DNA from: Haliotis rubra
Taxonomy: Eukaryota
Assembly (NCBI RefSeq): GCF_003918875.1
Contig: NW_025767020.1
Location: forward strand, 930,001 to 994,000
Length of the DNA: 64,000 nt
Reading direction: 5' to 3'
Numbering within the stretch: position 1 is the stretch's first letter; each line of letters opens with the position of its first letter. Below, one piece after another: positions 17,540 to 63,100 of this stretch. Below the pieces are notes generated by a model. It did not search any database and had not been told where the DNA came from. It saw nothing but the letters and a program-made list of their open reading frames with translations. The position numbers were made by a program, and so were the translations under genes.

Positions 17540-19830
17540 ATGGAAATATGGGTTGTTTATCTGATGCTAGGCTTTCTACACATGTCGGGTGAGTGTTTCA
17601 TTTATGTAGCATTATGGAGTTTTGTTGGAGTCAGATGCGAATGAAATCTGAGGTGGCGGAATTCCTCCCCAATCGCGGTATCACACACATATATGTCTAC
17701 GATGGCGGTCGAGTAGCCTACTGGTTAATGCGTTTGCTCGTTACGCCGAAGATCCAGGTTCGATATCCCAGTACAGAGTATAGTTTTTAGGAATATTCCA
17801 GCAATATCACGGTGGGGGACACCAGAAATGGGCCTCACATTGTACCCATATGGGGAATCCTAATGGTTAGAGCGTTCGCTCTTCACGCTTAAGACCCGGG
17901 TTCGATTCCATACATGGGTACAATGTATGAAGCCCACTTCTGGTGTCCACCGATGTGATATTGCTGCTTAAATTTCACTCACTCACTATGTTGCATTGTT
18001 TCTGCTACAGATGGCCTTCTGTGCTATCAGTGTTCCAGCAGCGGAAGTAAAGGCGAATGTATGACAGGGTACGGTACGTTCATAAGGGTGTCCAACGCAC
18101 TGTCCTCACCCAACAGCACCTTTGTTCGTGGGGGCGGCCCCACAGCCAGTGAAGTTCCTCACTACAAGAACTGCAACACCTTCGGTAACAGAAGCATGTG
18201 TATCATCGAAGAAGTTCGAAATGTGTGTAAGTGGTTATATGAACATGAACATTGTAATTTGAAAGCAGACAAGCTGAAATTGGGAGCTTGTTTGTTTATG
18301 TTGTNNNNNNNNNNNNNNNNNNNNNNNNNNNNNNNNNNNNNNNNNNNNNNNNNNNNNNNNNNNNNNNNNNNNNNNNNNNNNNNNNNNNNNNNNNNNNNNN
18401 NNNNNNNNNNNNNNNNNNNNNNNNNNNNNNNNNNNNNNNNNNNNNNNNNNNNNNNNNNNNNNNNNNNNNNNNNNNNNNNNNNGAACATGTTCAGGCATAT
18501 ATCCTGTCATCTTACATCTTACACGATAAGCTGTGCCAACGCCCGGTACCAAAAACATCAGATTCTTTTATTGATTGGTCAGCTTTAGAAACAGACAATG
18601 TCCGATTCCCCACAAGTGTACAATGTGTGAAGCCCATGTAATAATATTGATGAAATATTGCTAAAAGCGGCGTAAAATTAAACTCACTCACTCAAACTGA
18701 TACCTGATGCCATCACTGAATCACAGCAGTGATTCGAGGCATCCTTCACGAATGTCCGCAGTATATATCGTGAAAGTATTGGCAAGGAACCTGCGAGACG
18801 ATTATCATCACGATACAATAGTGGCAATATGATACGTATGCCCATCATTTACAATTTCTAATAACAGAACAGATATGATAGATAAAATGACTGAAACTTT
18901 ATTTGTTATACAGCAGAACTTGTGTTACATTCACTTAAACAGCTGTTGATCTAATAAAGTTTCAGCATTTAATGCTTATGAAAGTACAGTCAAACATATT
19001 TGGTATACCTTGATCTAATACACATAAATTTGAAAGCGAATCACTGAAAAACAATCTTTAGTCTGCCTTCTAAATTTTATCTTCTCTTTGTCCTCTTTCT
19101 TAACAAAGCTAAGACATCGTTCATAGTTGTTAATAGTGTCATTTGTCAAACATCTAAAACATATTTCAATTACTTGAAGACAAGTTTTCTACAGTTCACA
19201 GAGTTTGCAAAATGTTCACACTCTTTCACTTAAACACCAACTCCTTTGTTCCTGTAACAAAGATAACAGACACATTAAAGTCCTTTTAGGTTCAATTTCA
19301 AAGGATTTCAAAGAGACTCCTATCATATTACTAATGCAATATTCCTTAAAACTTTAAGTAGTATTTAAGTTGTATCGGGATATATCGTCTCTTGTGGCGA
19401 TACATTGATGTATCATAGACCCTCGCGATATACATATCCTGATATATTGCCTCAATGTGTTTTGTATCGATACACTCGTATCGCGTAGTTAACGATGTCA
19501 ATACTATCGATGAATCGTTACACCACTAATGGGTATGTTATATTGGTTTTTTGTTGGTCTGTTGCTATAGTTACGGGAGATGTTTCAAGCTTCAACCGGG
19601 ACTGTTCAGACGGTGTGTCGTTCTCCATCAACTCTACCTCCCTGAGCACAGACACGCCTGCCAACTTTACTGCTTGCGCATACGGTAACCATGGCTACCA
19701 AATCTGCATCACTCTGTGCAATTCCGGAAACTTCTGCAATGGGCCCAATAGAGGAGCACAACAAGAAAATCCCTCTGTTGTCGCGTTAACCTTCCTACTT
19801 TGCTTATTCTATTCTTGCGTCAAATTCTAA
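17540..19830 (+). CDS. Ly6/uPAR three-finger (Quiver/Sleepless-like) protein A, 174 aa, signal peptide and GPI-like tail. Exons 17540-17588, 18011-18226, 19571-19830
   Basis: Exon 1 MEIWVVYLMLGFLHMS G|gtgagt. Exon 2 (D)GLLCYQCSSSGSKGECMTG...KNCNTFGNRSMCIIEEVRNV. Exon 3 FTGDVSSFNRDCSDG...TACAYGNHGYQICITLCNSGNFCNGP plus a hydrophobic C-terminus. Both introns are GT-AG, phase 1; 10 Cys ending in CN; AATAAA at 19840-19845. Confidence 0.88.
18305..18482. other. Assembly gap (N run) in intron 2 of gene A
   Basis: Run of N. Confidence 1.
18765..19528. mobile_element. Probable non-autonomous hAT-like element (CGATA/TATCG-rich subtermini) in intron 2 of gene A
   Basis: Clusters of gatac/tatcg at both ends; terminus ...gaatcgttacaccacta. 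A similar end (catcgttacagcccta) lies at ~22815-22830. Confidence 0.4.
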
Positions 19831-22834: not shown

Positions 22835-25800
22835 TATGCTGTTCTGTAGGATTGAACACATCTACTTTGCTCTGATGTTTTGTGGGATTGAACACATCTA
22901 CTGTGCTCTGGTGTTTTGTGGGATTGAAAACATACACTTTGTTATGATGTTTTGTAGATTGAACACATCTACTTTCCTCTGCTGTTCTGTAGGATTGAAC
23001 ACATCTACTTCCCTCTGCTGTTCTGTGGAATTGAACACATCTACTTTGCTCTGATGTTCTGTGGGACTGATCACATCTACGTTCCTCTGATGTTCTGTGG
23101 ATTGAACACGTCTTCTTTGCTCTGATGTTTTGAGGGATTGAACACATCTGCTTTCCTCTGATGTTCTGTGGATTGAACACATCTACTTTGCTCTGATGTT
23201 TTGTGGGATTGATCACATATACTTTGCTCTGATGTTCTGTGGGATTGAACACATCCACTTTGCTCTGATGTTCTGTGGATTGAACACATCTACTTTGCTC
23301 TGATGTTCTGTGGGATTGATCACATCTACTTTCCTCTGATATTATGTAGGATTGATCACATCTACTTTTCTCTGATGTTCTGTGGGATTGAACACATCTA
23401 CGTTCCTCTGCTGTTCTGTAGGATTGAACACATCTACGTTCCTCTGCTGTTCTGTAGGATTGAACACATCTACGTTCCTCTGCTGTTCTGTGGGATTGAA
23501 CACATCTACTTTCCTCTGATGTTCTGTGGATTGATCACATCTACTTTGCTCTGATGTTTTGTGGGATTGAACACATCTACTTTCCTCTGATGTTCTGTGG
23601 GATTGATCACATCTACTTTCCTCTGCTGTTCTGTAGGGCTGAACACATCTTTTTTGCTCTGATGTTTTGTTGGATTGAACACATCTACTTTGCTCTGATG
23701 TTCTGTGGGACTGATCACATCTACGTTCCTCTGATGTTCTGTGGATTGAACACACCTACTTTGCTCTGATGTTTTCTGGGATTGAACACATCTGCTTTCC
23801 TCTGATGTTCTGTGGATTGAACACATATACTTTCCTCTGATTTTCTGTAGGATTGAACTCATCTACTTTGCTCTGATGTTTTTGTGGGATTGATCACATC
23901 TACTTTGCTCTGATGTTTTGTGGATTGAACACATCTACTTTGCTCTGATGTTTTGTGGGATTGATCACATCTACTTTCCTCTGATGTTTTGTGGGATTGA
24001 TCACATCTGCTTTCCTCTGATATTATGTAGGATTGATCACATCTACTTTCCTCTGCTGTTCTGTGGGATTGAACACATCTACGTTCCTCTGCTGTTCTGT
24101 AGGACTGAACACATCTACGTTCCTCTGCTGTTCTGTAGGACTGAACACATCTACTTTGCTCTGATGTTCTGTGGATTGAACACATCTACTTTGCTCTGAT
24201 GTTTTGTGGGATTGAACACATCTACTTTCCTCTGATGTTCTGTGGGATTGATCACATCTACTTTCCTCTACTGTTCTGTAGGGCTGAACACATCTTTTTT
24301 GCTCTGATGTTTTGTTGGATTGAACACATCTACTTTGCTCTGATGTTCTGTGGGACTGATCACATCTACGTTCCTCTGATGTTCTGTGGATTGAACACAT
24401 CTACTTTGCTCTGATGTTTTGTGGGATTGAACACATCTACTTTCCTCTGATGTTCTGTGTGGGATTGAACACATCTACTTTCCTCTGATGTTCTGTAGGA
24501 TTGAACACATCTACTTTGCTCTGATGTTTTTGTGGGATTGAACACATCTACTTTGCTCTGATGTTCTGTGGATTGAACACATCTACTTTGCTCTGATGTT
24601 TTGTGGGATTGATCACATCTGCTTTCCTCTGATATTATGTAGGATTGATCACATCTGCTTTCCTCTGCTGTTCTGTGGGATTGAACACATCTACGTTCCT
24701 CTGCTGTTCTGTAGGACTGAACACATCTACGTTCCTCTGCTGTTCGGTAGGACTGAACACATCTACTTTGCTCTGATGTTCTGTGGATTGAACACATCTA
24801 CTTTGCTCTGATGTTTTGTGGGATTGAACACATCTACTTTCCTCTGCTGTTCTGTGGGATTGATCACATCTACTTTCCTCTGCTGTTCTGTAGGACTGAA
24901 CACATCTTTTTTGCTCTGATGTTTTGTGGGATTGAACACATCTACTTTCCTCTGATGTTCTGTGGGATTGATCACATCTACTTTCCTCTGATGTTTTGTG
25001 GGATTGAACACATCTACTTTTCTCTGATGTTCTGTGGGATTGAACACATCTACTTTCCTCTGATGTTCTGTAGGATTGAACACATCTACTTTCCTCTGCT
25101 GTTCTGTAGGATTGAACACATCTACTTTCCTCTGCTGTTCTGTGGGATTGAACACATCTACTTTCCTCTGATGTTCTGTGGGATTGATCACATCTACTTT
25201 CCTCTGCTGTTCTGTGGGATTGAACACATCTACTTTCCTCTGATGTTCTGTGGGATTGAACACATCTACTTTCCTCTGATGTTCTGTGGGATTGATCACA
25301 TCTACTTTGCTCTGATGTTTTGTGGGATAGAACACATATACTTTCCTCTGATGTTCTGTGGATTGAACACATCTACTTTCCTCTGATATTCTGTAGGATT
25401 GAACACATCTACTTTGCTCTGATGTTCTGTGGGATTGATCACATCTACTTTCCTCTGATGTTCTGTGGGATTGATCACATCTACTTTGCTCTGATGTTCC
25501 GAAGGATTGATCACATCTACTTTGCTCTGATGTTATGTGGGATTGAACACATCTACTTTCCTCTGATGTTTTGTGGGATTGATCACATCTACTTTTCTCT
25601 AATGTTCTGTAGGATTGAACACATCTACTTTGCTCTGATGTTCTGTATGGGATTGAACACATCTACTTTCCTCTGATGTTCTGTGGGATTGATCACATCT
25701 ACTTTCCTCTGATGTTCTGTGGGATTGAACACATCTACTTTGCTCTGATGTTCTGTGGGATTGAACACATCTACTTTCCTCTGATGTTCTGTGGGATTGA

Positions 25801-27765
25801 TCACATCTACTTTCCTCTGATGTTTTGTGGGATTGAACACATCTACTTTGCTCTGATGTTCTGTAGGATTGATCACATCTACTTTCCTCTGATGTTCTGT
25901 AGGATTGAACACATCTACTTTGCTCTGATGTTTTGTGGGATTGATCACATCTACTTTCCTCTGCTGTTCTGTGGGATTGATCACATCTACTTTCCTCTGC
26001 TGTTCTGTAGGACTGAACACATCTTTTTTGCTCTGATGTTTTGTGGGATTGAACACATCTACTTTCCTCTGATGTTCTGTGGGATTGATCACATCTACTT
26101 TCCTCTGATGTTTTGTGGGATTGAACACATCTACTTTTCTCTGATGTTCTGTAGATTGAACACATCTCCTTTCCTCTGCTGTTCTGTAGGATTGAACACA
26201 TCTACGTTCCTCTGCTGTTCTGTGGGATTGAACACATCTACTTCCTCTGCTGTTCTGGGATTGTCCTCTGATGTTCTGGGATTGATTGACATCTACTTTG
26301 CTCTGATGTTTTTGTGGGATAGAACACATATACTTTCCTCTGATGTTCTGTGGATTGAACACATCTACTTTCCTCTGATATTCTGTAGGATTGAACACAT
26401 CTACTTTGCTCTGATGTTCTGTGGGATTGATCACATCTACTTTCCTCTGATGTTCTGTGGGATTGATCACATCTACTTTGCTCTGATGTTCCGAAGGATT
26501 GAACACATCTACTGTGCTCTGATGTTATGTGGGATTGAACACATCTACTTTCCTCTGATGTTTTGTGGGATTGATCACATCTACTTTTCTCTAATGTTCT
26601 GTAGGATCGAACACATCTACTTTGCTCTGATGTTCTGTAGGATTGAACACATCTACTTTCCTCTGATGTTCTGTGGGATTGATCACATCTACTTTGCTCT
26701 GATGTTCTGTGGGATTGAACACATCTACTTTGCTCTGATGTTCTGTAGGATTGATCACATCTACTTTCCTCTGATGTTCTGTAGGATTGAACACATCTAC
26801 TTTGCTCTGATGTTTTGTTGGATTAATCACATCTACTTTCCTCTGATGTTCTGTGGATTGATCACATCTACTTTCCTCTGATGTTCTGTGGGATTGATCA
26901 CATCTACTTTCCTCTGATGTTCTGTAGGATTGAACACATCTACTTTCCTCTGATGTTCTGTGGGATTGATCACATCTACTTTCCTCTGATGTTCTGTGGG
27001 ATTGAACACATCTACTTTCGTCTGATGTTCTGTGGGATTGATCACATCTACTTTCCTCTGATGTTCTGTGAGATTGATCACATCTAATTTCCTCTGATGT
27101 TTTGTGGGATTGATCACATCTACTTTTCTCTAATGTTCTGTAGGATTGAACACATCTACTTTGCTCTGATGTTCTGTAGGATTGAACACATCTACTTTCC
27201 TCTGATGTTCTGTGGGATTGATCACATCTACTTTCCTCTGATGTTCTGTGGGATTGAACACATCTACTTTGCTCTGATGTTTTGTGGGATTGATCACATC
27301 TACTTTCCTCTGATGTTCTGTGGATTGATCACATCTACTTTCCTCTGATGTTCTGTGGGATTGATCACATCTACTTTCCTCTGATGTTCTGTAGGATTGA
27401 ACACATCTACTTTCCTCTGATGTTCTGTGGGATTAATCACATCTACTTTCCTCTGATGTTCTGTGGGATTGAACACATCTACTTTCGTCTGATGTTCTGT
27501 GGGATTGATCACATCTACTTTCCTCTGATGTTCTGTGAGATTGATCACATCTAATTTCCTCTGATGTTCTGTGGGACTGATCACATCTACTTTCCTCTGA
27601 TGTTTTGTGGGATTGAACACATCTACTTTCCTCTGATGTTCTGTGGGATTGAACACATCTACTTTCCTCTGATGTTCTGTGGACTGAACACATCTACTTT
27701 CCTCTGATGTTCTGTAGGATTGATCACATCTACTTTCCTCTGATGTTCTGTGGGATTGAACACAC
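22835..27765. repeat. 36-bp minisatellite of ~4.9 kb (roughly 135-140 units); consensus CTGATGTTCTGTGGGATTGAACACATCTACTTTCCT
   Basis: Contiguous tandem units with occasional 35/37/38-bp variants. This repeat explains all repetitive ORFs here (MFCGIEHIYFPL, EHQRKVDVFNPT, SEESRCVQSHRT). Confidence 0.98.
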
Positions 27766-29011
27766 CAATCTACTCAAATGGTAGATGTTTTCGGGGGATT
27801 GGGTCTGTTTGTTAATTTTGTACACCTATTCTCAAAATTCCTACATTTTTTGTCTCGTTTGACTTCTCGGCCTTGTCTGTAAGTATCAATGCGACCTTGC
27901 ACCTGTTTTTGTCACAGATCCCCAGAACCAGCTCTTGTTTACAGTCCCAAAAATCCGCTTTGCTTTATTTCATTTATCATTTCTTTATACAGCTCCAAAT
28001 CTCAGGATTCTCGTCATGTCAGCAAAATGATTTCGGATTCTGTAACATCTTTTAAATCTCGCTTCCAAACTAATCTTTTCACCAGCACTAATTATTGTCT
28101 ATTCTTAATCCACCATATATATTTTGTATATATCCTCTCGTTCTATTGAAGCGACTTGAACACGCACAAGTGATAAAAGTCCATTATTGATATTTTTAGA
28201 AATGGGCTTCCCACGTTGTACCCATGTGGGGAATCGAACCCAGGACTCGGCGTGACGAGCGAACGCTTAAAACTTGGCAACCACATTACTGCTATGTAGA
28301 TAGTCATTTTGTACATACTTCGTTGCTCTATATGTGTAAAAGGTTTTCTTGGCAGCTTGACACAAATACGTATCATCCGTGAAATCATAGGCTTTGTATT
28401 ATTCGACGCAACCACCACCATTAATCATTGTAAAGTTAGCAATGAATATCTATTTCGTTCTACAGTTACACAGAAGGAGACTGTGGAATTTCAAATTCTT
28501 AAACCTACGAACGACTATTAACAGCAATAGGGATTTCAATGCAGCTCTGACCCAAAACATATCACATGACTTCTTGAATGACATCATGTATAGGGTAGGG
28601 AATAATGCAAATTCTAAAAACAACAGTAACTGAAACCATTCGACGCTGGGTCACGGTGACACAAGCATCCAATCTCACCACTCGATACGGTTCGGTTAGA
28701 ACGCCCAAGAGACCCACGTGACCCAAGAAAGTTGGTGTTGCATACAAAAGCAGTTGCATATTAAAACACATCCTGTTCAGTAGCGTTGGCGTGTCGTGTG
28801 TCGTGCTGTCTTTCATTGTAATCTGACTCTCGGTCCCCGACTAGGTGCTTTCCCGAAGTAGTCCCTTGGTACTGATCCCTGCATCTAAGAGAAGAAGGGT
28901 GTGCTACTCATCTCCTTGACAAGCTTACGCACAAACGAAACTCCGATGACTGAACATACTTGTGCATATGGTGGAGAAAGGTTTCCTCTCCCGTAGAGGC
29001 TGCTTGCATCA

Positions 29012-30733
29012 TTGACTAAACTTAGGACACGGACTATGGCAACTGTACTCAGCCTTGTTCTGTTTTTCGGATTATTTCACAGCTCGGGTAAGTTGTTCTT
29101 AAATCACACTGACGAAATCCATGGTCTTGTGGGTAGAGCTTCTCCGGAAAGACCGGTTGGTCAGTGGTTCGATATCTAGACGCGTCGCTTTTGACTAAAT
29201 TTAGGAGATTAAAATGACAATCCACTCAGTCGTGATCTGATTATCGGGTTGCTTCAAAGCTCGGGTAAGTTCTGTCATTATTCTTAAACCACACTGACGA
29301 AATCCATGGTCAATGGTCAAGTGTTTAACGACCGGTTGGTCAGTGGTTCGATACATGGCCGCGTCTCTTTTGACTAAATTTAGGAGATTTGAATGACAAC
29401 CCTACTCTGATTATCGGGTTATTTTACAGTTCAGGTAAGTTATGTCATTGTTCTTTAAACACACTGACGAAATCCATGGTCAAGTGTTTAACGACCGGTT
29501 GGTCAGTGGTTCGATATCTGGACGCGTCTGTTTTCACTACATTTAGTAGATTTAAATGACAACCCCACTCAGTCGTGATCTGTTTCTCGGGTTACTTCAC
29601 AGCTCGGGTAAATTGTTCTTAAATCACGCTGAGGAAATCCATGGTCTTGTGGGTAGAGCTTCTACGGGAAGACCGGTTGATCAGTGGTTCGATATCTGGA
29701 CGCGTCTCTTTTTACTAAATATAGGACATTTAGGACATTTAAATGACAACCCCACTCTGAATATCGGGTTATTTTACAGTTCAGGTAAGTTATGTCATTG
29801 TTCTTTAATCACACTGACGAAATCCATGGTCAAGTGTTTAACGACCGGTTGGTCAGTGGTTCGATATCTGGACGCGTCTGTTTTCACTACATTTAGTAGA
29901 TATAAATGACAACCCACTCAGTCGTGATCTGTTTCTCGGGTTACTTCACAGCTCGGGTAAATTGTTCTTAAATCACGCTGAGGAAATCCATGGTCTTGTG
30001 GGTAGAGCTTCTACGGGAAGACCGGTTGGTCAGTGGTTCGATATCTGGACGCGTCGCTTTTGACTAAATTTAGGAGATTTAAATGACAATCCACTCAGTC
30101 GTGATCTGATTATCGGGTTGCTTCAAAGCTCGGGTAAGTTCTGTCATTATTCTTAAATCACACTGACGAAATCCATGGTCTTGTGGGCAGAGCTTCTCCG
30201 GAAAGACCGGTTGGTCAGTGGTTCGATATCTGGACGCGTCGCTTTTGACTAAATTTAGGAGATTTAAATGACAATCCACTCAGTCGTGATCTGATTATCG
30301 GGTTGCTTCAAAGCTCGGGTAAGTTCTGTCATTATTCTTAAATCACACTGACGAAATCCATGGCGTTGTGGGCAGAGCTTCTCCGGAAAGACCGGTTGGT
30401 CAGTGGTTCGATATCTGGACGCGTCGCTTTTGACTAAATTTAGGAGATTTAAATGACAATCCACTCAGTCGTGATCTGATTATCGGGTTGCTTCAAAGCT
30501 CGGGTAAGTTCTACCATTATTCTGAAATCACAATGACGAAATCCATGGTCAATGGTCAAGTGTTTAACGACCGGTTGGTCAGTGGTGCGATGTCTGGACG
30601 CGTCGCTTTTGACTACATATAGGACATTTAGGACATTTAAATGACAACCCCACTCTGAATATCGGGTTATTTTACAGCTCAGGTAAGTTATGTCATTGTT
30701 TCTTTAATCACACTGACGAAATCCATGGTGTAG
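29012..30733 (+). repeat. Tandem array of ten ~160-185-bp units; each unit is exon 1 of gene B + 5' splice donor + tRNA-SINE head
   Basis: ATGs at 29036, 29214, 29393, 29556, 29743, 29906, 30083, 30268, 30453, 30641. Donor GT at 29088, 29265, 29435, 29608, 29785, 29957, 30134, 30319, 30504, 30683. Confidence 0.92.
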
Positions 30734-32797
30734 TGATGTTAAGACGCAGTATAAAACGTTGTGAAACAGGGTTTCAAATTTTATACACTGTGCATTTTAT
30801 ACAATGCAATAGTGGCGCGCTATATGTAGACTTGTGCTATATTTGGACAGAGTTCTCGGGCTTCCACGGTGTTCTGGCTAGACTAACTCTTAGTCTCTGA
30901 ATATGTATAATTTTGATAGTAACAAACAAACCCATATAAATTGAAAAGGAGTCCCAGAGAGACCAGAGATTCTGAATCTGAGGAAGTCTAGACTTGCTTC
31001 ATTTAGGGCTTTAGCATTGCAGGGAGGGCTTGGCAGTGGGGACAATAATGAGGTTCAGGGACTGTGACACATGTTCTGACCAACAACATATTATAGAATT
31101 TTCCAGCAAATATTTTCGGTGACGATCATATACCCTGCCTTGGCCTATAGTTAAAGTCGGATCACTGTTGCTGAGCGCAGAGCGTCTGTCATGAGACCGG
31201 TTGGTCAGTGGTTCGAGCCACGGTCACGGCCATGCCACGTCGTGTCCTAAGAGGACCTAAGAAATGGGCTTGACACATTGTGCGCATGGCAATGTGTGAA
31301 GCCCATTTCTGGTGTCCCCCGCCGTGATATTGCTAAAAAGCTGCGTAAACCTAAACTCATTCATTCATTGTACGCATGGGGAACCGAGGCTGGGTCTGTG
31401 GAGTGACGAGCGAACTCTTTAACCGCTAGGCTACCCTACCACCCCTTTAACGATTGGAACACATGGTGTCATTCATATAATTTCGACCAGTACATTGTCT
31501 CGTGGTCATCTGTTTCAGTGGATAATAGAGACTGCATGGTTATTCTCTGTCCTTGATATTTTTTTTTTATCTGTTCAGACGGAATCCTCTGTTACACCTG
31601 CGGCGCCGCTGGAGGAGAAGGGGAGTGTATTTCTGGGTACAGTTTATTCCTAGATGTCTACAGACACGTTATGAACAACAACACAAAGCACGTCAACGAC
31701 GCCGGCAGCCGCTATCCTGGTTACGCGGACTGCGACACCTTCCCAGAACAAACTGTGTGCATGATTGAAGAAGTTCGTGAGAGTAGTAAGTTGGAATAGA
31801 AAATGCTTTTTTTCCTCAAAAAAAAAAAGAGTAAAATTTAACTTTGGTCACCGGTTCAAAATCTTGTTTCCAAATCAACGAAGCACTGAAACAGACATAC
31901 ATTTACAGGGAACTTTACCCACTAAGGTGTGTAATTGAGTTTAGTTTTACGCCGCTTTTAGCAATATCCCAACAATATCACGGCAGGTGACACCAGAAAT
32001 GGGCTTCACACATTGTACCCATGTGGGGAATCGAACCCTGGTCTTCGGTGTGACGAGCAAACCACTAGGCTACCTCACTGCTCCTCACTGTCATGCGATT
32101 TCTGGTTGCATAATCACTCTGCCCTTGTTAGGAGTCTCGTTACGATAGATCGCCATTACCTCCATGTATTGTCGTAAAGACAATTTCAAAAAACAACTAA
32201 AAACGGGGCCATACCTCATATGAAATTGAAACTGCTCGATATCTAGCTCTCGTATAACTAAACTCTGCGCCTCGCGTGGTTGATTCTCCCTGCAGTGATG
32301 ATGATGATGAGTTGCTCGTGGAGGGGATGGGGGGAGGGTAGCCTTGTGGTTAAAGAGCTCGCTCGTCACGCTGAAGACCCAGGTTCGATTCCCCCTTCCC
32401 CATTCTGAAGCCCATTTCTGGTGTCATTCAGTATTTCTGAACTATAGCTAAAAGCGGCGTAAAATTAAACTCACTTACTCACTCTTTTACCTGACAGTAC
32501 ATATTTCGTATATGTATTTCGACTCTCATTCTCTCCGCAGAAACCAGAAAGATCCTCAGTTACATCCGGGGCTGTTCAGATGGCGTGACCTTCTCGTTTA
32601 ACCTGGCCAATCTGAAAGGTCTGAAACCCTCAAACACCACGACGTGTGGGTTTGATACTCGAGGCTACCGTCCCTGTGTCACTCTATGCAAGTCGGACTT
32701 CTGTAACGGACCTTCTGGAGCGACAAGATCGCATCTAAGTTTGGCGATGACTGTCATCTGTCTTGTCGTCCTATACTGCAAATTGCGGGCATCCTAG
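29036..32797 (+). CDS. Ly6/uPAR three-finger (Quiver/Sleepless-like) protein B, 171 aa. Exons 29036-29087, 31579-31785, 32541-32797
   Basis: Exon 1 MATVLSLVLFFGLFHSS G|gtaagt. Exon 2 (D)GILCYTCGAAGGEGECISG...ADCDTFPEQTVCMIEEVRES. Exon 3 KTRKILSYIRGCSDG...TTCGFDTRGYRPCVTLCKSDFCNGPSG plus a hydrophobic tail. Phase-1 GT-AG introns; 10 Cys. Confidence 0.88.
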
Positions 32798-33806
32798 AAG
32801 GTTGTGTATTTATGTTGATTATGGGATTATGTAATATATTAATCTATTGATATATAATAATAATATGGCAACTTATATTTTACTGAACTCCACGCCACAC
32901 GTGCATGCAACATAATGGACATTATCACCCCGAACAACCCAAGCTGGAAGGTTAAAAGTCATATGACTTATCCCATCGGGTACCCATTTTCTGCTGGATG
33001 AACAGTGGTAATTTTAAACAAACCCACAAGCCTATCGCTATTGTTAGGTAGACTATCAGTTTTACCTAAAGTCATGGCAGTGCATACTATGGAAATTATC
33101 CCCATAAGTATGACCGAGGAAACCAATGACCACCAAATGACCACCATGTGCTTCGTGGTTAGGCAGGACAGAAGCCCCTGAAACTCTCAGGAGTCAAGAC
33201 CAAACACGGATGGGAATACTGTAAGATTTTGAGTTCAGTTTGTTGCGTTTGATCCAGAAATGTTATCTGGTCACAACAACGTGAGAAACATTGAAGGAAT
33301 AATGAGTGAGTTACTATTTACCGTCACATCCGCAATATCTCAGCCATATCGTGACCATTGAAGGAATAAAAAATATCGTAATGTATTGACGTACGTTGTA
33401 CATGAAATTTCAAATATATGTTTTTATTGCTTAGCATACTTTAAATAGTATAGATGAACATATTCCCGGGCGATAATGATATATCTAATACATATTCATT
33501 TTGCAATGAGTTGTACCTCCTAATACATGCTCTTTGTGTAATGCATTTACTACCGAAGTTAGCGGATCATAGAGTATTCAGATTGGGAAATAATCTTGCC
33601 CAATGAAACAAATGATCATGTATATATCCTAGGCCGGAGAGCTGTCACTGAAATAAACCTGTCTCTCTGTCCGTCTGTCTGTCTGTCAAATCAGGATACG
33701 GCTGAAGCAGCTTGTTTGGTCCGAATATTTTGTTTTAGTGTTTTACCACGTGTACATGTGCATGGGAGTTGTGCGCATGCTCAGGGCTACATGTGACTTA
33801 AACACT

Positions 33807-36934: not shown

Positions 36935-39900
36935 ATGGCTATCACAATATTCATCTTCATTTGTCTACTCGGAGTGTTGCCCTTTACAGGTAAGTAATAC
37001 ATTTGTCATTTCCCGCCGATATCAGGCTAATTTATCATGGAGTAAATACACACTACACAATATACTCACATGTCAACACATGTATGGAAAATATGATTTG
37101 TCCATACCGTTATTACGCAGAACCACACTTCCTGGGTTCTAAGGCATATATCAAGCTAATGTATGATGAATAAAATATACACAACACAATATACTCACAT
37201 GTCAACACATGTATGGAAAATCGGTTTTCTCCATACCGTTATTACGCAGAACCACACTTCCTGGGTTCTAACGCATATATCAAGCTAATGTATGATAAAT
37301 AAAATATACACAACACAATATAAACACGCCTCAACAAATTTATGGAAAATCCACTTGCTCAACTCTTCCCAGCTTCTAACTGTTGGTAACTATTTGTATT
37401 TAAATATCCGTGACTAATCCGTAACTGTGAACCGTAACGATTTGGTTTAACGAGTTTCGAGGAATGTGTAAACAGAAGTACATACCAACTGTTAGGATAT
37501 CTACAATAAAGGGTTCAATAACGTTATGGTTGGAAACAGCGATATCAGCCGGTTTAGTCTGTGTATAAAATATATACATCAGTTTCGTTGTTGTAAGATA
37601 TCTCCTGAAAATGGCAGCTTAACCTTGGTTACTGCTTGGCAAGAAGCCATTGGTGATTACTATTGCGTGTTCTGCACACTGCGCGGGACGGGCATGTTTG
37701 ATGTATGGAATCCTAGAAGGGACATCTCAGCGTTGTTGCCCTTACAAACCCGAGTCAAAACTTGCAAAGAAGTAACCGAACCAGCTGTCGCATTTGAAGA
37801 ATTGTCGCGTATAGGGCGACCATGGATAACATATTTACAACGGTCAAAATATGCTGACGTACGCAATAGGTGAGGTGAGGTGAAATTGGGTTTAACGTCA
37901 CGCTTGAGAATATTTCGCTCATATGACGACGTGCATGCGCGTGTATGTGTAGATGCGGCTGCTTGTACTAGCCCACACTGAAGCTGGTTTTATAGTGCTA
38001 GCCCACTGAGATACCATGCCGCAGTGTAACATGAATACCCACTCAGACACATTATACTGACTTCGAGCCGACCAGTCCTTGTTGTACCCATTAATCCCAA
38101 ACGCCAGGCGGGGACCAACAAGTACCATATTTTAACGTCTTTTGGTATGACGCGGTCGGGGATCGAACCCGCGACCTTCCGCTCTCCGGGCAGACGCTCT
38201 AACCACTACACCACGGAGGCGGTCACGTACGCAATAAAGTAACACACACATTAACTTACGACTATCTTAGCGCTAAAGAGGGCGTCGAAAATCTAGGCCC
38301 TGGTGTTTGTCCATGTACACAATGCTTTTAGCTTTTCAAATCATAAGTATGGGGTTTTGAATTTTTGGGAAAATGACTCCAAAGTGTGTAGTTTCTTTTG
38401 TGTGTCAGTTTATGACATACGTTTATATCCCGAGGCAAATGAACAGTGTGTTTGTTGTCTTTGGGTGTAAAAACTTCATTATCAATTTTTGGCCGGTATT
38501 TTTATGACTTTTGAGACCTTTTTGGTAATCAATTTTACCTCGTGGGGGGCGTGTTTTAAATTTAATCAACTGGGATATTAAAAGAAAAAATTTAAGGATG
38601 TTCATTTACTGCTTCTCTTATCATAATGAAGTCCCATGTGGAAAACCCCTTTTGTTTCAGTTAACCCAACACGTTTATTAAAACTGTTTTCAGATAGTCT
38701 TCTGTGCTATCAGTGCAGTGCAACTGGTGGCAAAGGCGAGTGTATAAACGGACATGACAACTTTCTGAAAGTGTCCAGACATGTCTTGGCTGCCAAAAAT
38801 AACACTGGCGCCGTCATTGTGGACGATTCCGGAAGTCAGGCTAATCATTACAAGAACTGCGACACCTTCGTCAACAGAACCATGTGTATGATTGAAGAGG
38901 TCCGGAATGGAAGTAGGTGGTGTGAGTGAGCTTATTTTTACGCCGCACTCAGCAATATTCCAGCTATATGGCGGCGGTCTGTAAATAATCGAATCTGGAC
39001 CAGACAACCCAGTGATTGAGCACCGATCTACGCAACTGGGATACAATGACATGTGTCAACCAGTAAGCGAGCCTGACCACCCGATCTGGTTAGTTGCCGC
39101 CAGACGACAAGTATGAGTTGCTGAAGATCAAATCTAACCCGGATCTTCATGGGTCGGAAGTAGGTTGAACTAAGTGCCGTTTGAAAAAGTTTCTTTCTTT
39201 GCTGTTTAACGTCGCATCCAGCAATATTATTTCGGGATATAAATGCAGACTGACAAACCAGGGGTGATATTATGAGCAACACACTATGCTATCGGGGTTT
39301 GGAAAACACTGAGTCTGACCACCCAATCCAGTGCCATAGTCCCACACTACAGTATTTTGAAGTTAAAAAAAACATTAATTTGACAGAAACATGAAGAGAC
39401 AAAAGTCAGATAGTAAGATGTCTAACTAGATTAGATCATTTTAGATGGTGGCGCCATGTCTCGTTGGTACCACTGATCTAGTTGGTCCAGTTTAGAGTGA
39501 GTAAAGGACTATTGTTTTACGCTACTTGTAGCAATATTCCATGGGACACCAGAAATGGGCTTTATACTTTCTACTCATGTGGGGAATCGACCCCGAGTCT
39601 TGGGTGTGACGGGCGACCGCTTTCTCAACTCGACCACCCGACTAGGCCGATCGCCCGTCCAGCTCATATCTTAAGACATTGATATAAAATATCTTGTCAC
39701 AAACGTCACTGTGTAAGTTTACTTCCGGTGTTAGACGGAAGTCACTTTGGTGGCCACTTGGGACAGTGCGGCAGCCTGGAAATATCATAGAAATATATAC
39801 CACTTGTTTCAATGCCTCGTCTTCTCAACATTCTCTCTATCCACAGTTGCCGGAACTATTTTAAGCTACATCCGGGATTGTTCTGACGGAAGTACGTTCT

Positions 39901-54138: not shown

Positions 54139-57100
54139 TCACTGAACTTTGCAGGGTGGGTCAAGGTCAGCTTGCTCTGAAATGGCAAAACCTGAGTGAG
54201 AACAACGTTTTTAAACCATTTATGGATATTTTTTGGGTTAAATTGTGGAAATGGAAATGTGGGACCTAATAATGTTTTACCTTATTTGGCACTGTGTTAT
54301 TGGTTGACCTTGTTATTTGAAATATGCAGTAATGATTCAAGTGCAGGTTATACTGAATTTATACAAGACTGTTCATTAAGTATATACAGCAAGCAAACCT
54401 ATGGCACGTTTTGTATTACATATGGGTCTTGTAGAAATTGAAGATTGTTCATACAGTGCAATGTATCAAATATGTTTCTTAAATTTACAGTCATAATGGT
54501 TTCTGACAGTATCCACAGATAAAATTCCCCCAATCATTTGAATTCTTTTCTGAAACTGGCTGGTTAAATTGAAACAAATATGTCCGACAATTAAAATATA
54601 ATTGGCTCTCACAGTGGAACCATGACTAAGATCAGACACAGTTGTTGACATTCATATTGTTGCTTGGTGACACTGCCATGACAACTGAGACTGTCTTACC
54701 TCTTTTGGCAAGTCTGCGTTCAATGTGGGTGTCACAGAGAGGACATATCTCGGTGATCAGGCAACACTGTCGACACAGGACCTTGTGGCCGCATGGCATC
54801 AGGGTTATGTCCGCCATCTTGTCCATGCACTTGGCACATGGGAGATGCATATCAAACAATGTACTGCCCATCCGGAACCTTGCCCCAAGCCCTTGTTGGC
54901 TGGAGGGGGTGGAACGCTGGATAGAACCCTGACTGGAAGATGGTACAACCAATGGTATAAATTAGTTTCAGTGTGTACCAACATAGTCATATAAATTTTC
55001 CCAAAGTTTCCTTTATCTTTTTAGAGCAAGAGCACAAATAATCAAGCCAGTCTCTTGTATTGATCATACTGAGTGTGTGAATTTTTAGAGTACTCCGGGT
55101 ATGTCATCCAGGGTAGACCAGACAAACTAGTGGTTGACAGAAATTATCCATGTTGTCAGGATATGTTGAGCTATTAGTTGTATCCAATAATCTGATAATT
55201 TGATGTTTTTTATCACCTAATACAACTGGTATACTGGGAACCTATTCTCCCATCAGTTCTCACGAAGAACTGTATGTGCCATGAGGGATCCTTTTTTGCC
55301 CTGAAAAGCCCCTGTGAGACATGCTTGTGGTACAGGGACCTCTTCTTCCCAAGAACCCAAACAGGGAGGTAAGCATGGGGCATGGGGACCTATCATTTCC
55401 CAGAACCTTAATGGGGACACAAGCCTGGGGTACAGTGACTTATTCTTTTCCAGAATGAAAATACAGAGACAATTGTGGGGTACTGGGACCTAATACTTTC
55501 CAGAACCCTAATGCAGACCTTATCATCACCAGAACCAAAATGTGGACACAAGCGTGAAGTTCAGGGACACAAGTGTGGGGTGAGGAGACCTATTCTTCCC
55601 GAGAAACCTTAAAGGGACACAGACATTGGGAACACTGGGACCTAATCTTTTCCGGAAACCTAATGCAGACACAAGTGTGGGGTACAGGGACCTATTCTTC
55701 CCCAGAACACTACTGGAGGCACAAGTGTGAGGTGCAAGGACCTATTCTTCCCCTGAACCCTACTGAAGACACAAGGATGGGGTGCAGGGTCCTATTCTTC
55801 CTCAGAACACTACTGGAGGCACAAGTGTGAGGTGCAGGGTCCTATTCTTCCCCAGAACACTACTGAAGACACAAGTGTGGGGTACAGGGACCTATTCTTC
55901 CCCAGAACACTACTGGAGGCACAAGTGTGAGGTGCAAGGACCTATTCTTCCCCTGAACCCTACTGAAGACACAAGTGTGAGGTGCAGGGTCCTATTCTTC
56001 CCCAGAACACTACTGGAGACACAAGGATGTGTGCAGGGACCTATTCTTCCCCAGAACACTACTGGAGGCACAAGGATGGGGTGCAGGGACCTATTCTTCC
56101 CCTGAACCCTACTGAAGACACAAGCATGGGGTGCAGGGTCCTATTCTTCCCCAGAATACTAATTGAGACACAAGTGTGGGTTACAGGGACCCATTCTTCC
56201 CCAGAACACTAATGGAGACACAAGCTTGGGGTACAGGAACCTATTCTTTCCAAGAACACTAATGGAGACACACGCATGGGGTGCAGGGACCTATTCTTCC
56301 CCAGAACACTAATGGAGACACAAGCATGAGGTGCAGGGACCTATTTTTCCCCAGAACACTACTAGAGACACAAGCATGGGGTGCAGGGACCTATTCTTCC
56401 CCAGAACACTAATGGAGACACAAGCATGAGGTGCAGGGACCTATTCATCCCCAGAACACTAATGGAGACACAAGCTTGGGGTACAGGAACCTATTCTTTC
56501 CAAGAACACTAATGGAGACACACGCATGGGGTGCAGGGACCTATTCTTCCCCAGAACACTAATGGAGACACAAGCATGAGGTGCAGGGACCTATTTTTCC
56601 CCAGAACACTACTAGAGATACAAGCATGGGGTGCAGGGACCTATTCTTCCCCAGAACACTAATGGAGACACAAGCATGAGGTGCAGGGACCTATTTTTCC
56701 CCAGAACACTAATGCAGACACAAGCATGGGGTGCAGGGACATATTCCTCCCCCAGAACCCTACTAGAGACACAAGCATGGGCTGCAGGGACCTATTCCTC
56801 CCCCAGAACCCTACTAGAGACACAAGCATGGGGTGCAGGGACCTATTCTTCCCCAGAACCCCAACAGGGAGAAAATCACCTGGAACAGGGACCGGACCTT
56901 TTCCTTTCTCATTCCCATACCAATGAGCACAGGTAAATGGTGAACAGACTAGGATAATGTTTTGGGTTAATCTGATTCAAACCCAAAAATACTTAACATA
57001 AGTTTATAATCACTTTTGTCTGATAAACAGCTGCACTGCCTGACGAACTGTGGGACTCTTGGCAACCTCGAGTGGTGTGGCGCCCCTATTGTTCTTTGCA

Positions 57101-60100: not shown

Positions 60101-63100
60101 CAAAGATCCTGTGAAAAGTGAAAACCCTATTAAATATACCTATACTATTGCCCCTTATCCCAACTTAATTCCCCAAAATAATGTTCCCTGCAAAATACAA
60201 CAAAAATTAACAACCTAACATTATCTAACCAAAACTTAAGAAACTTAAAACACTGTTTGCCTAGTTTACAGAAACAATAGGGAATTTCACACCTTACTTG
60301 CCTCTGTAAGACCCCAGAGTGCAGAGGAAAAAATAATCTGCCCTTTTATACCCCTAACCTATAACTCTTACCCAATAAAATCCATGCTCTGAAAAATACC
60401 CAATAAATGCCTACAAAAGAAAAGTTCAGTGGACTGATCCCTCTGCTCATGAGATGCACATGCACTGGCACATCCCATTGCATAACAATGGGGAAGAAGC
60501 ATACTAGGCACTTGCCTAGCGGGTCCTTACCCCTCAAGAGCTAATGGACCAGCCCACTGAAGGCTAAGCCTGGTGTGTTATTTTTAGCCCAGCCTATGCC
60601 TAACAAGTCCCCACCCTAAAACAAGCCTAATTTCTACTAAAAAAATAACTCTACCATTACACAATATTAGCCTACCATGGCAAGGTCAAAGCCTTAGATG
60701 TCAATAAAAAACATGATCAATGTTCCAAAGCCTTCCATCTCAGTAACAGTATCTGGTCAGTTTCTAATTCCAAGCACCATGTCAGTCTTCAAACAGTCTA
60801 CCACATCAATTACATGTCTTGCCAATCTTCAAATGCTAACCAAATCAATGAAATGTGTAGGTCAGTATTATCAAAAGCCAATCATATCAACATTAGGGTC
60901 AGTTTGCAAAAGCTTACTATGTCAAAAACAAGTAAGTCTTTTCTGGTCTACTATTTCTATAAAATGTATGGTCAATTTTCAAATGCCAACCAAATCAATA
61001 AAATCTGGTCAATCTTCAAAAGCCTACCATAATCTGGTCAATCTTCAAAAGCTTACCATGTCAATGAAATCTGGTCTTTCTTCAAAAACCAATCATGTCA
61101 ATGAAATCTGGTCATTCTTCAAACCTACCATATCAATGAAATCTGGTCAATCTTCAAAAGCTTACCATATCAATGAGATTAGTCAATCTTCAAAAGCTTA
61201 CCATGTCAATAGTGTCTAGTCATTCTTCAAAAAGCATACCATGTCAATGAGAAGTCTGGTCAATCTTCAAAAGCCTACCAAATCAATAAAATGAATGGCC
61301 AATCTTCAAAAGCTTACCATGTCAATGAAGTCTGGTCAATCTTTAAAAGCATACCATGTCAATGAGAAGTCTGGTCAATCTTCAAAAGCCTACCATGTCA
61401 ATGAGAAGTCTGGTCAATCTTCAAAAGCCTACCATGTCAATGAGAAGTCTGGTCAATCTTCAAAAGCCTACCAAATCAATAAAATGAATGGCCAGTCTTC
61501 AAAAGCTTACCAGGTCAATAAGAAGTCTGGCACATTCCACATGGTCATTGATGGTAGCAATATGCAGGGCGGCAAAATTGTCCTCACCCTTCTGAAGATT
61601 CACAACGCCCGCGTCTCTCTTCAAAATGGCCTGTGTGGCGCTGAAACAGAGTGATATAGTTTATGGCGACTTGGACCAGAAATAGGGTCTCTTTGTAGTT
61701 GCATGTCGAAGAGTTACATCCCTTTGCTTGTCGACTGCAGATGTTTGTGCACACACATTTGAAAGGGTTATTCTTGGAGTGGTAAAACAAGGCTTACCCT
61801 GTTATTTGACTGGTATTGATTGAATCATACTGTTTAAATCATGGCACAGTTGTAAAGCAAAATGGCTGAAAATCAGAATTACTGACAAACACACAGTTTT
61901 CAGTTCTGAGGCTCATGTCAACATTAGTGAGTGAGTTTAGTTTTTAAGCTGCACTCAGCAATATTCCAGCTATATGGCATAGATCTGTATATAATCGAGC
62001 CTGGCCAGAAAATCCAGTGATCAATAGCATGAGCATCGACCAATGCAAATGGGATACGACCATATGTGCCAACCAAGTCAGTGAGCCTGACCACCCGATC
62101 CCGTTAGTCACCTTTTACGACAAGTATGGGTTACTGAAGATCAATTCTAACCCGGATCTTCACGGGTTCATTCCAGCATTAAGTGACATCATTGTTCATA
62201 TGACTGATTACCTCACACTGGGCAATCATCAATTCTCATTTACCTGACTGTCACATTACCAAATACAGAGAGAGGCACACATGTCTATTTGAACCTGTGT
62301 AAGACTTACATGACTGTGATGTTTTGTTTGTTTCATTGTTGTCCAACACCGCACTGAAAAACTCCAATGTTATCCCATGGTCTAAATTTTGCATTGAGTT
62401 ATCAATACTGGAAATCCTGGTTGGTAAAATGCAAGCAATTGTTCTTTTTGTTCAAATGATCTTTCACAAGTACACAATTCACCTGGTGTTTCCGGTGAAG
62501 GCAGCAAACTGCAGTGGATTGAACCCTTTCTTGTTGGGAATGCGGAGGTCAATCTTGGCAGCTCTCATCAGAAGGTCAACAGCCTCCCTGTTCCCCTTCT
62601 GAATGGCATCATGGAGGGCTGTGTCACCAACTACATCCTGAAATATACGGTAAGTTAATTAAGTTTAAAAATGAAGTTGAAGTTGAAACATATTTTGCAG
62701 AAGTTGACTGTGTGGAAGAAAACATCAATAAACCTCTGAAAATATCAGAGTCAACTGTATGATTTCAACCAAAAAAAAAACAAAACAAAAAAAACAAAAA
62801 AAAAATATGCTGATGGTTGTCTAATGCAAAAAAATTTACCAAAGTAACAGTTCCAATCCCATAATGATTACAATATGTGAAGTCAATTCTTGGTCTCATC
62901 TGCCATTATGCAAATAGACTATTGCTAAAAGAGGCATAAAATCACACTCACTCCTTTTAACATGTTTACACAAAAATGTTATATTTTAAAAACATGAAGA
63001 CACTTCACTTTCTAAGTTATACACAAATCAAATTCGTGTTTTGAATCAGCATTTTATTTGCTTTGTTTGATGTTTAACACCGCACTCAGCAATATTCCAG

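What the first reader, a model, noticed from the sequence alone, without database searches (positions are those of the whole stretch)
29012..30733. Ten-copy tandem array of the signal-peptide exon plus splice donor of a three-finger gene
Seen: what looks like a ~180-bp satellite is exon 1 of gene B amplified ten times with its 5' UTR end, ATG and donor. Unit 1 is the intact signal peptide (MATVLSLVLFFGLFHSS G|GTAAGT, 29036-29087). Unit 4 (29556-29607) is open and in the same phase (MTTPLSRDLFLGLLHSS G|GTAAAT), but Arg-Asp in the hydrophobic core should weaken or abolish ER targeting. Unit 6 is open but phase 0, so it would be frameshifted against exon 2. Units 2, 3, 5 and 7-10 reach a TGA within 6-9 codons. 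The coding part has decayed, yet all ten donors keep GT: eight are GTAAGT, and units 3, 5 and 10 read CAG|GTAAGT behind a pyrimidine-rich ttattttacag, which resembles a recursive AG|GT splice point. Inference: nine extra donors lie between the real exon 1 and exon 2. They could act as decoy or poison donors, alternative first exons (secreted versus non-secreted isoform) or recursive-splicing steps, so copy number could tune expression of the protein.
Basis: partly seen in the sequence, partly recalled or inferred. Interest (0 to 1): 0.8.

Follow-up and report, generated by a model that had tools for sequence, protein, structure and literature searches.

The report
Splice-junction minisatellite copying a signal-peptide exon
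The end of the first exon of a small Ly6-like gene (start codon, signal peptide, splice donor) plus the start of its intron has been copied ten times in a row; this is a known kind of repeat ("mirage" minisatellite), and the transcript evidence shows only the first, real copy in use.

Summary
There are ten tandem units of 163-185 bp at 29013-30735, each with an ATG and a GT donor. Unit 1 is the intact signal-peptide exon, unit 4 is open in phase 1, unit 6 is open in phase 0, and the other seven reach an early TGA.

- The real exon 1 starts at or before 28755, so the units copy only its last ~75 nt and no promoter.
- The array ends where a dispersed repeat (30736-31175) was inserted. The rest of unit 10 resumes at 31177-31216.
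- Spliced RNA contigs from two organisms join 29087 to 31579 only, and no RNA contig lies on units 2-10.

The donors are no better conserved than their neighbours. Half of the alignment columns are invariant, and 41-54% of 9-column windows are at least as conserved as the donor window. Unit 1's coding part is the outlier (51-73% identical to the other units), while its intron part is 88-98% identical. That is the usual exclusion of an edge unit from homogenisation.

This matches the amphioxus "mirage" minisatellites and the human F7 intron-7 repeat, where pseudo-donors stay silent. This scan has already found many such arrays elsewhere in this genome. It is most likely a tolerated by-product, and a decoy or dosage role remains untested.

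The parts
28755..29087 (+). Real exon 1 of gene B (5'UTR at least 281 nt, plus ATG at 29036 and a 17-codon signal peptide; ends in phase 1)
   Evidence: Spliced RNA contig X1 record 1 (1557 nt) lies on 28755-29086/7, then 31578/9-31785, then 32541-33302. Translation.
29013..29191 (+). Unit 1: the authentic exon end and donor (GT at 29088), plus the first ~100 nt of intron 1
   Evidence: Its coding part is 51-73% identical to the other units; its intron part is 88-98% identical.
29192..30609 (+). Units 2-9: intronic pseudo-exon copies with ATG and GT donors (29265, 29435, 29608, 29785, 29957, 30134, 30319, 30504). Higher-order structure: units 3+4 match units 5+6 (97%), unit 7 matches unit 8 (98-99%), unit 2 resembles unit 9
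30610..30735 (+). Unit 10, left part (donor at 30683), cut by a repeat insertion
   Evidence: Array homology ends at 30735, and homology to dispersed copies starts at 30736-30737.
30736..31175 (.). Dispersed, high-copy repeat inserted into unit 10
   Evidence: Many matches elsewhere in the genome. Contig depth rises from about 50 to 10^5-10^6 in DNA runs.
31177..31216 (+). Rest of unit 10: the diverged 3' half of the tRNA-like segment, and the right edge of the array
   Evidence: Local alignment to unit 8 scores 47, against a maximum of 25 in 300 shuffles. The stretch is unique in the genome.
31579..31785 (+). Exon 2 of gene B (first five Cys of the domain; phase 1 at both ends)
   Evidence: RNA contigs X1 and X5; translation; paralog alignment A2.
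32541..32797 (+). Coding part of exon 3 of gene B (five more Cys, a C-x5-CN end, a hydrophobic C-terminal tail, and the stop codon)
   Evidence: RNA contigs; translation; alignment A1.

Best explanation
This is a "mirage"-type splice-junction minisatellite. A segment of about 180 bp straddling the exon 1 / intron 1 boundary of a Ly6/uPAR-like gene was duplicated in tandem. The segment holds the last ~75 nt of exon 1 (ATG and signal peptide), the donor, and ~100 nt of intron. Unequal exchange then expanded and reshuffled it.

Only the first unit is an exon. It sits behind the gene's promoter and long 5'UTR, it keeps the ancestral leader, and it is the only donor seen in mRNA. Units 2-10 are intronic pseudo-exons removed with the intron.

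Their donors look intact because the copies are young and keep being homogenised, not because the donors are selected. The splicing machinery most likely takes the first donor it meets behind the cap, as shown experimentally for the human F7 intron-7 repeat. Any slip to a later donor would carry the in-frame TAG at 29177 and be unproductive.

Shown here: the structure, the use of the unit-1 donor, the lack of extra donor conservation, and the edge-unit pattern. Inferred: neutrality, the first-donor rule in this animal, and loss of mis-spliced RNA.
For: Structure and uniqueness of the array.

RNA:
- X1 contig record 1 (depth 141) joins 29087|31579 and 31785|32541.
- X5 (another organism code) has two allelic contigs with the same exon 1-exon 2 junction.
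- RNA depth is 0 in every bin from 29235 to 30737. The 16.0 in bin 29068-29234 is exactly the last 19 nt of exon 1.

No promoter is copied: the transcript starts at or before 28755, and the unit starts at 29013.

Donor conservation is ordinary:
- 66 of 131 alignment columns are invariant.
- 32% of all 2-column windows are invariant in all ten units.
- 41-54% of 9-column windows are at least as conserved as the donor window.
- The longest invariant runs lie in the intron part.

Concerted evolution with the edge unit left out: unit 1's coding part is 51-73% identical to the other units, its intron part 88-98%. Internal units are 97-100% identical in blocks.

Exon 1 is ancestral. Paralogs A and C each have a single predicted leader exon of the same phase with a similar end, and none of the other seven paralogs in the cluster has such an array.

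Minisatellites are common here: about 12 arrays in 138 kb.

Precedents:
- PMC3087553: amphioxus mirages, with units up to 150-160 bp, no effect on splicing, and boundary units excluded from homogenisation.
- PMC1557585: the F7 IVS7 pseudo-donors are silent and the most upstream donor is chosen.

Many similar arrays are noted elsewhere in this genome.
Against: The RNA evidence consists of assembled contigs from one run each of two organism codes. Contigs drop rare isoforms, and NMD would hide unproductive ones.

Three pseudo-donors (units 3, 5, 10) match the consensus better (9/9) than the real one (8/9), so some use is plausible.

GGTAA is invariant in all ten units, and only 6% of 5-column windows are that conserved. 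This is a weak signal.

Neutrality is inferred, not shown. Earlier notes of this scan say junctions carry such arrays more often than chance predicts (not tested here).
Confidence: 0.77

Rival explanations
1. Decoy or poison donors. Some transcripts splice from a downstream donor, pick up the in-frame TAG at 29177 and are degraded, so array length sets how much productive mRNA is made.
For: There are nine consensus donors, three of them 9/9 matches to CAG|GTAAGT, against 8/9 for the real one. Read-through from the real ATG meets a stop after 47 codons. The unit make-up differs in another individual (X6 contig: 28 differences in 459 nt, clustered in unit 2).
Against: No RNA contig extends past 29087 or lies on units 2-10, although the main transcript has depth 141. 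The donors are not preferentially conserved. In the F7 model, identical pseudo-donors do not compete with the first one (PMC1557585).
Confidence: 0.1
2. Recursive splicing. Units 3, 5 and 10 (pyrimidine tract plus CAG|GTAAGT) act as ratchet points, so that intron 1 is removed in steps.
For: The sequence of those three units fits the recursive-site consensus.
Against: The intron is only 2,491 nt, whereas known recursive sites serve very long introns (general knowledge). The motif differs from the coding sequence of unit 1 by only a few changes and is shared by one recently duplicated subfamily. The end product would be identical, so the contigs neither show nor exclude it.
Confidence: 0.03
3. 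Alternative first exons. Transcription starts inside the array, giving isoforms with another leader (unit 4) or no leader.
For: All ten units keep an ATG, and unit 4 is open in the right phase.
Against: The units lack the promoter and the first ~258 nt of exon 1. No RNA contig starts or lies in the array. Eight of the nine copies are closed or out of phase. Unit 4's leader has Arg-Asp in its hydrophobic core.
Confidence: 0.03
4. A SINE- or Pol III-driven repeat. The array is a satellite derived from a tRNA-type SINE that captured, or gave rise to, the exon. This is the reading of the neighbouring note s1-329680.
For: Each unit has a ~75-nt stretch with A-box-like and B-box-like motifs followed by a T run. 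One other locus (C2257) matches it at 79% over 68 nt, next to other tRNA-like sequence.
Against: ARAGORN finds no tRNA, and Rfam finds no tRNA or SINE match at E up to 1. The stretch is otherwise unique to this locus in 1.38 Gb. The exon is ancestral in the gene family.
Confidence: 0.04
5. Assembly artefact. The array, or its copy number, was produced by misassembly.
For: Short-read contigs of another sample collapse the middle of the array, joining 29390 to 30652.
Against: That collapse is what a word-graph assembler does with any tandem repeat. The same contigs confirm units 1-3 and units 8-10 joined to both unique flanks. The units differ enough (60-99% identity) to be ordered uniquely.
Confidence: 0.03

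Closest known systems
"Mirage" minisatellites of amphioxus (Adh3, globins BflGb6 and BflGb9): tandem duplications of exon-intron boundaries (PMC3087553; it cites Canestro et al. 2002, which I could not read here)
   Same: The unit spans an exon-intron junction. Unit length is comparable (150-160 bp in BflGb6, 163-185 bp here). Many units keep splice signals. Regular splicing is not disturbed. The cluster shows concerted evolution with boundary units excluded. Composition varies between haplotypes.
   Different: This one is in a mollusc. It involves the first exon, so each copy also holds the start codon and the whole signal peptide. It has a 349-bp higher-order period and a transposon insertion in the last unit. 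Somatic instability was not examined.
Human F7 intron-7 37-bp VNTR, whose first element spans the exon 7 / IVS7 boundary (PMC1557585)
   Same: The authentic donor is followed by a row of near-identical pseudo-donors that stay silent, and the most upstream site is used.
   Different: The F7 unit is 37 bp and follows an internal exon. Here the unit is ~180 bp, the copies have diverged (60-99% identity), and three pseudo-donors are stronger than the real one. No mutational test exists for this locus.
Clusters of variable first exons spliced to common exons (protocadherin, UGT1A; from general knowledge)
   Same: Several first-exon-like units with donors lie upstream of a shared exon 2.
   Different: In those clusters each exon has its own promoter and an intact reading frame. 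Here there is no promoter copy, eight of nine copies are broken, and no transcripts are seen.
Recursive splice sites of long introns (Drosophila and vertebrates; from general knowledge)
   Same: Units 3, 5 and 10 have a pyrimidine tract followed by CAG|GTAAGT.
   Different: The intron is 2.5 kb rather than tens to hundreds of kb, and the motif is a by-product of the copied exon end.

Membership tests
Mirage / splice-junction minisatellite | The tandem repeat unit spans an exon-intron boundary | tested here: met
   Each unit holds ~75 nt of exon 1's end, the donor, and ~100 nt of intron. The exon boundary is fixed by an RNA contig.
Mirage / splice-junction minisatellite | The authentic junction is the outermost unit and is the one used in mRNA | tested here: met
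   Junction 29087|31579 is seen in X1 and X5 contigs.
Mirage / splice-junction minisatellite | Pseudo-sites are silent in mature RNA | tested here: inconclusive
   RNA contig depth is zero over units 2-10 in two runs. Contigs drop rare forms, and no NMD-blocked data were available.
Mirage / splice-junction minisatellite | Concerted evolution inside the array, with edge units left out | tested here: met
   Internal blocks are 97-100% identical. Unit 1's coding part is 51-73% identical to the others, and the right-edge remnant at 31177-31216 is diverged.
Mirage / splice-junction minisatellite | Length or composition polymorphism between individuals | tested here: inconclusive
   The DNA contig of another sample differs at 28 of 459 positions, clustered in unit 2. 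Copy number cannot be read from short-read contigs.
Ly6/uPAR (three-finger, LU domain) protein, GPI-anchored | Ten-Cys pattern with an N-terminal L-x-C-Y-x-C and a C-terminal C-x5-CN | tested here: met
   Five Cys in exon 2 and five in exon 3, all invariant in the three paralogs.
Ly6/uPAR (three-finger, LU domain) protein, GPI-anchored | N-terminal signal peptide and hydrophobic C-terminal tail | tested here: met
   A 17-residue hydrophobic leader (hydropathy 2.69) and a hydrophobic tail after the CN motif. No SignalP or GPI predictor was available.
Ly6/uPAR (three-finger, LU domain) protein, GPI-anchored | Match to a curated LU-domain profile (PF00021, PF17064 and related) | tested here: not met
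   Pfam gives no hit for exon 2 or exon 3 pieces of genes A, B or C at E up to 10. PDB profile searches gave no relevant hit. The exons were searched apart, which halves the signal. The Atlas feature search lists only families of the uPAR/Ly6/toxin clan, at scores 0.85-0.91, which is a lead only.
Ly6/uPAR (three-finger, LU domain) protein, GPI-anchored | Three-finger fold | not tested
Recursive splice site | Pyrimidine tract plus AG|GTAAGT | tested here: met
   Units 3, 5 and 10.
Recursive splice site | Sits in a very long intron and yields splicing intermediates | tested here: not met
   The intron is 2,491 nt. Intermediates cannot be tested with contigs.
tRNA-derived SINE | Recognisable tRNA-like structure and dispersed copies | tested here: not met
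   ARAGORN found 0 genes. Rfam found no tRNA or SINE hit. There is one distant match in the whole genome.

The most novel reading that the evidence does not exclude
The nine promoter-proximal U1-binding sites are not inert. Array length, which varies between individuals, would change gene B output, either through unproductive splicing or through U1-dependent effects on transcription. More broadly, this genome would make junction minisatellites by a mechanism tied to splice sites rather than by chance, which would explain why so many are seen here.
Probability: 0.1. Interest if true: 0.6.

Novelty: new member of a known kind. Interest (0 to 1): 0.27.

Why it matters
On its own this locus is another example of a described repeat class, and the protein is made from the first unit as if the array were absent.

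It is a clean natural test for 5' splice-site choice outside vertebrates: ten donors in a row, three of them stronger than the one used, directly behind a first exon. It also shows how whole leader exons can be multiplied, which is raw material for new first exons or new introns, as proposed for amphioxus globins.

The wider question is why exon-intron junctions in this abalone genome so often turn into minisatellites. That belongs to the set of such findings rather than to this one.

Tried and rejected
- Satellite or SINE origin. I searched the whole assembly with the full unit, with the tRNA-like part and with both flanks. The unit is locus-specific. Only the 30736-31175 insert and later intron stretches are dispersed repeats.
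- tRNA or Rfam identity of the unit. Nothing was found.
- DNA similarity between exon 1 of gene B and the paralogs. blastn with word size 7 found none. A constrained scan then found one leader exon each for A and C. These are predicted and not RNA-verified.
- Exon-1 arrays in the other seven paralogs of the cluster. TRF over 138 kb found none.
- Pfam and PDB searches on exon pieces gave no hits. The joined protein was not built, searched or folded. The large protein searches were not run, because an exon piece cannot reach full-length relatives of about 170 aa.
- Assembly artefact: rejected on independent DNA contigs.
- The original mirage paper (PMC117041) is not held.
- Read laying and the look-up of sequencing runs allow one call each, so runs X2-X4 and raw reads were not examined.

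Full report
**What is there**

Reading 28700-32000 with Tandem Repeats Finder (periods 185 and 349, 84-88% matches) and the repeat finder confirms a head-to-tail array. Anchoring on a conserved motif gives ten units, starting at 29013, 29192, 29371, 29534, 29712, 29884, 30061, 30246, 30431 and 30610. They are 163-185 nt long.

- All ten have an ATG.
- All ten have a GT donor: eight GTAAGT, two GTAAAT, and three preceded by CAG.
- Unit 1 encodes a 17-residue hydrophobic leader ending in phase 1.
- Unit 4 is open in phase 1 and unit 6 is open in phase 0.
- The other seven meet TGA at codon 6 or 9.

**The gene**

The window holds three paralogous genes on the + strand (A, B, C). Each has a phase-1 exon 2 that begins with L-x-C-Y-x-C and carries five Cys. 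Each has an exon 3 with five more Cys, a C-x5-CN motif and a hydrophobic tail. The contig carries eight such genes between 864 and 969 kb.

The pattern is that of GPI-anchored Ly6/uPAR proteins. These are abundant in molluscs, about 83 per genome according to PMC13719153.

Support from profiles is lacking. Pfam gives nothing for the exon pieces, and PDB profile searches give nothing relevant. An Atlas feature search lists only families of the uPAR/Ly6/toxin clan, at lead level.

I therefore did not join the exons, and neither searched nor folded the joined protein. "Three-finger gene" is thus likely but rests on the Cys pattern.

**Transcripts**

One call of read laying put contigs of four public runs on 28400-33400.

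- Run X1 holds a 1557-nt contig (depth 141) that lies on 28755-29086, 31578-31785 and 32541-33302. Allowing for a G shared by both sides of the first joint, the junctions are 29087|31579 and 31785|32541, both GT-AG.
- Run X5 (another organism code) has two allelic contigs with the same exon 1-exon 2 junction and one with the exon 2-exon 3 junction.
- In both runs the depth over 29235-30737 is zero. The 16.0 in bin 29068-29234 of X1 equals the last 19 nt of exon 1 at depth 141 spread over the bin. So no contig runs past the real donor.

Two consequences follow. First, only the unit-1 donor is seen in use. Second, exon 1 starts at or before 28755, about 258 nt upstream of the array's left edge. 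The units therefore copy neither the promoter nor most of the 5'UTR.

**Is the donor specially kept?**

In the ten-unit alignment, 66 of 131 columns are invariant. Of all 2-column windows, 32% are invariant in all ten units. Of 9-column windows, 41-54% are at least as conserved as the donor window. The longest invariant runs lie in the intron part. GGTAA as a 5-mer falls in the top 6% of windows, a weak signal at best.

The variable fraction is 0.46 in the exon-like part, 0.36 in the intron start and 0.48 in the tRNA-like part. So "coding decayed, donors kept" is not a real contrast.

**History**

The units fall into three exon-like types (2, 7, 8, 9 / 4, 6 / 3, 5, 10). The intron-part types do not match these groups, so units are recombinant. 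Blocks of two units are repeated: 3+4 match 5+6 at 97%, and 7 matches 8 at 98-99%.

Unit 1 is the outlier only in its coding part. There its best identity to any other unit is 65-70% per 20-column window, against 92-100% from the donor onward.

Paralogs A and C each have a single candidate leader exon of the same phase with a similar end. Their start reads ATGG-, like unit 1 and unlike the ATGACAA of units 2-10. So unit 1 keeps the ancestral exon and the other nine are derived copies. None of the other seven paralogs has such an array, although about 12 minisatellites lie in these 138 kb.

On the right, array homology stops at 30735. Homology to dispersed copies starts at 30736-30737 and runs to 31175. 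The missing part of unit 10 then resumes at 31177-31216 (score 47, against a shuffle maximum of 25). A transposon therefore landed in the last unit. The array predates that insertion, while its inner units are still being homogenised.

**The tRNA-like stretch**

Each unit holds about 75 nt with A-box-like and B-box-like motifs (noted separately by the scan as s1-329680). ARAGORN and Rfam see nothing there. The stretch has only one distant relative in the genome. I treat it as an old, degenerate fragment that happened to lie in the duplicated segment.

**Independent DNA**

Contigs of another sample (X6, X7) cover the left flank plus units 1-3, and units 8-10 plus the right flank. They collapse the middle, as word-graph assemblies do. 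The left contig differs from the window at 28 of 459 positions, clustered in unit 2, so the make-up of the array varies between individuals. Copy number could not be measured.

**Comparison with what is known**

A word search of the scan's notes showed many "exon end plus donor" minisatellites elsewhere in this genome, which those notes call blacklip abalone. Earlier follow-ups tied them to amphioxus "mirages" and to human F7. The scan has therefore found this kind of repeat before, on other DNA.

I checked both sources:
[quoted passage not shown] Units reach 150-160 bp, many keep splice signals, splicing is undisturbed, copy number differs between haplotypes, and boundary units are excluded from homogenisation. 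Each of these features is seen here, except copy-number variation, which I could not measure.
- PMC1557585 shows for the F7 intron-7 repeat that the pseudo-donors are functional in principle but silent. The most upstream donor is chosen by a 5'-to-3' scanning process, even when the pseudo-sites match U1 well.

That gives a tested mechanism for why the unit-1 donor wins here, although units 3, 5 and 10 match the consensus better (9/9 against 8/9). Whether the rule holds in a mollusc is inference.

**Rivals**

- Decoy or poison donors. Any downstream donor would bring in the TAG at 29177, so the products would be unstable and could escape contigs. I give this 0.1.
- Recursive splicing fits the motif but not the 2.5-kb intron.
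- Alternative first exons lack promoters, open frames and transcripts.
- A SINE or Pol III origin fails the tRNA and dispersal tests.
- An artefact is excluded by independent contigs.

**Verdict**

This is a new member of a known class, and it is unusual only in copying a whole start codon and signal peptide with a long unit.

Noticed in passing
window 22840-27764: A 36-bp minisatellite of about 137 copies (4.9 kb) lies between genes A and B. It is open in several frames, which gives long spurious ORFs on both strands.
   Followed up: partly
G000 contig C2130, 864-969 kb (window genes A, B, C plus five upstream; loci L039-L043): A tandem cluster of eight paralogous Ly6-like genes, all on the + strand. 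No Pfam profile recognises their exon pieces.
   Followed up: partly
window 33303-33374: All four runs laid, the two DNA runs included, skip 72 nt here with non-canonical ends (TG..AT). The window therefore carries a 72-bp insertion or duplication in the 3'UTR of gene B relative to the other samples. It is not an intron.
   Followed up: no
window 37019-37351: A 129-bp repeat of 2.6 copies starts 30 nt after the predicted donor of gene C's exon 1. It sits at the same place in the gene as the array in gene B but does not include the exon.
   Followed up: partly
window 31239-31450, 31936-32060, 32241-32574: Very high-copy tRNA-derived SINE-like repeats lie in introns 1 and 2 of gene B, with contig depth up to 10^7 in DNA runs. 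Similar elements fill intron 1 of gene A at 17700-17960.
   Followed up: no
window 55566-56859 and 60969-61530: Two further minisatellites (50 bp x 26 copies, and 39 bp x 15 copies). With the others this makes about 12 arrays in 138 kb, so minisatellites are a common feature of this genome.
   Followed up: no
window 29066 and 29080: The signal peptide of gene B varies between samples. T>A at 29066 (Phe to Ile) is in all four runs laid, and C>T at 29080 (His to Tyr) is in the X6 DNA contig and in one X5 allele. Both changes leave the leader hydrophobic.
   Followed up: no
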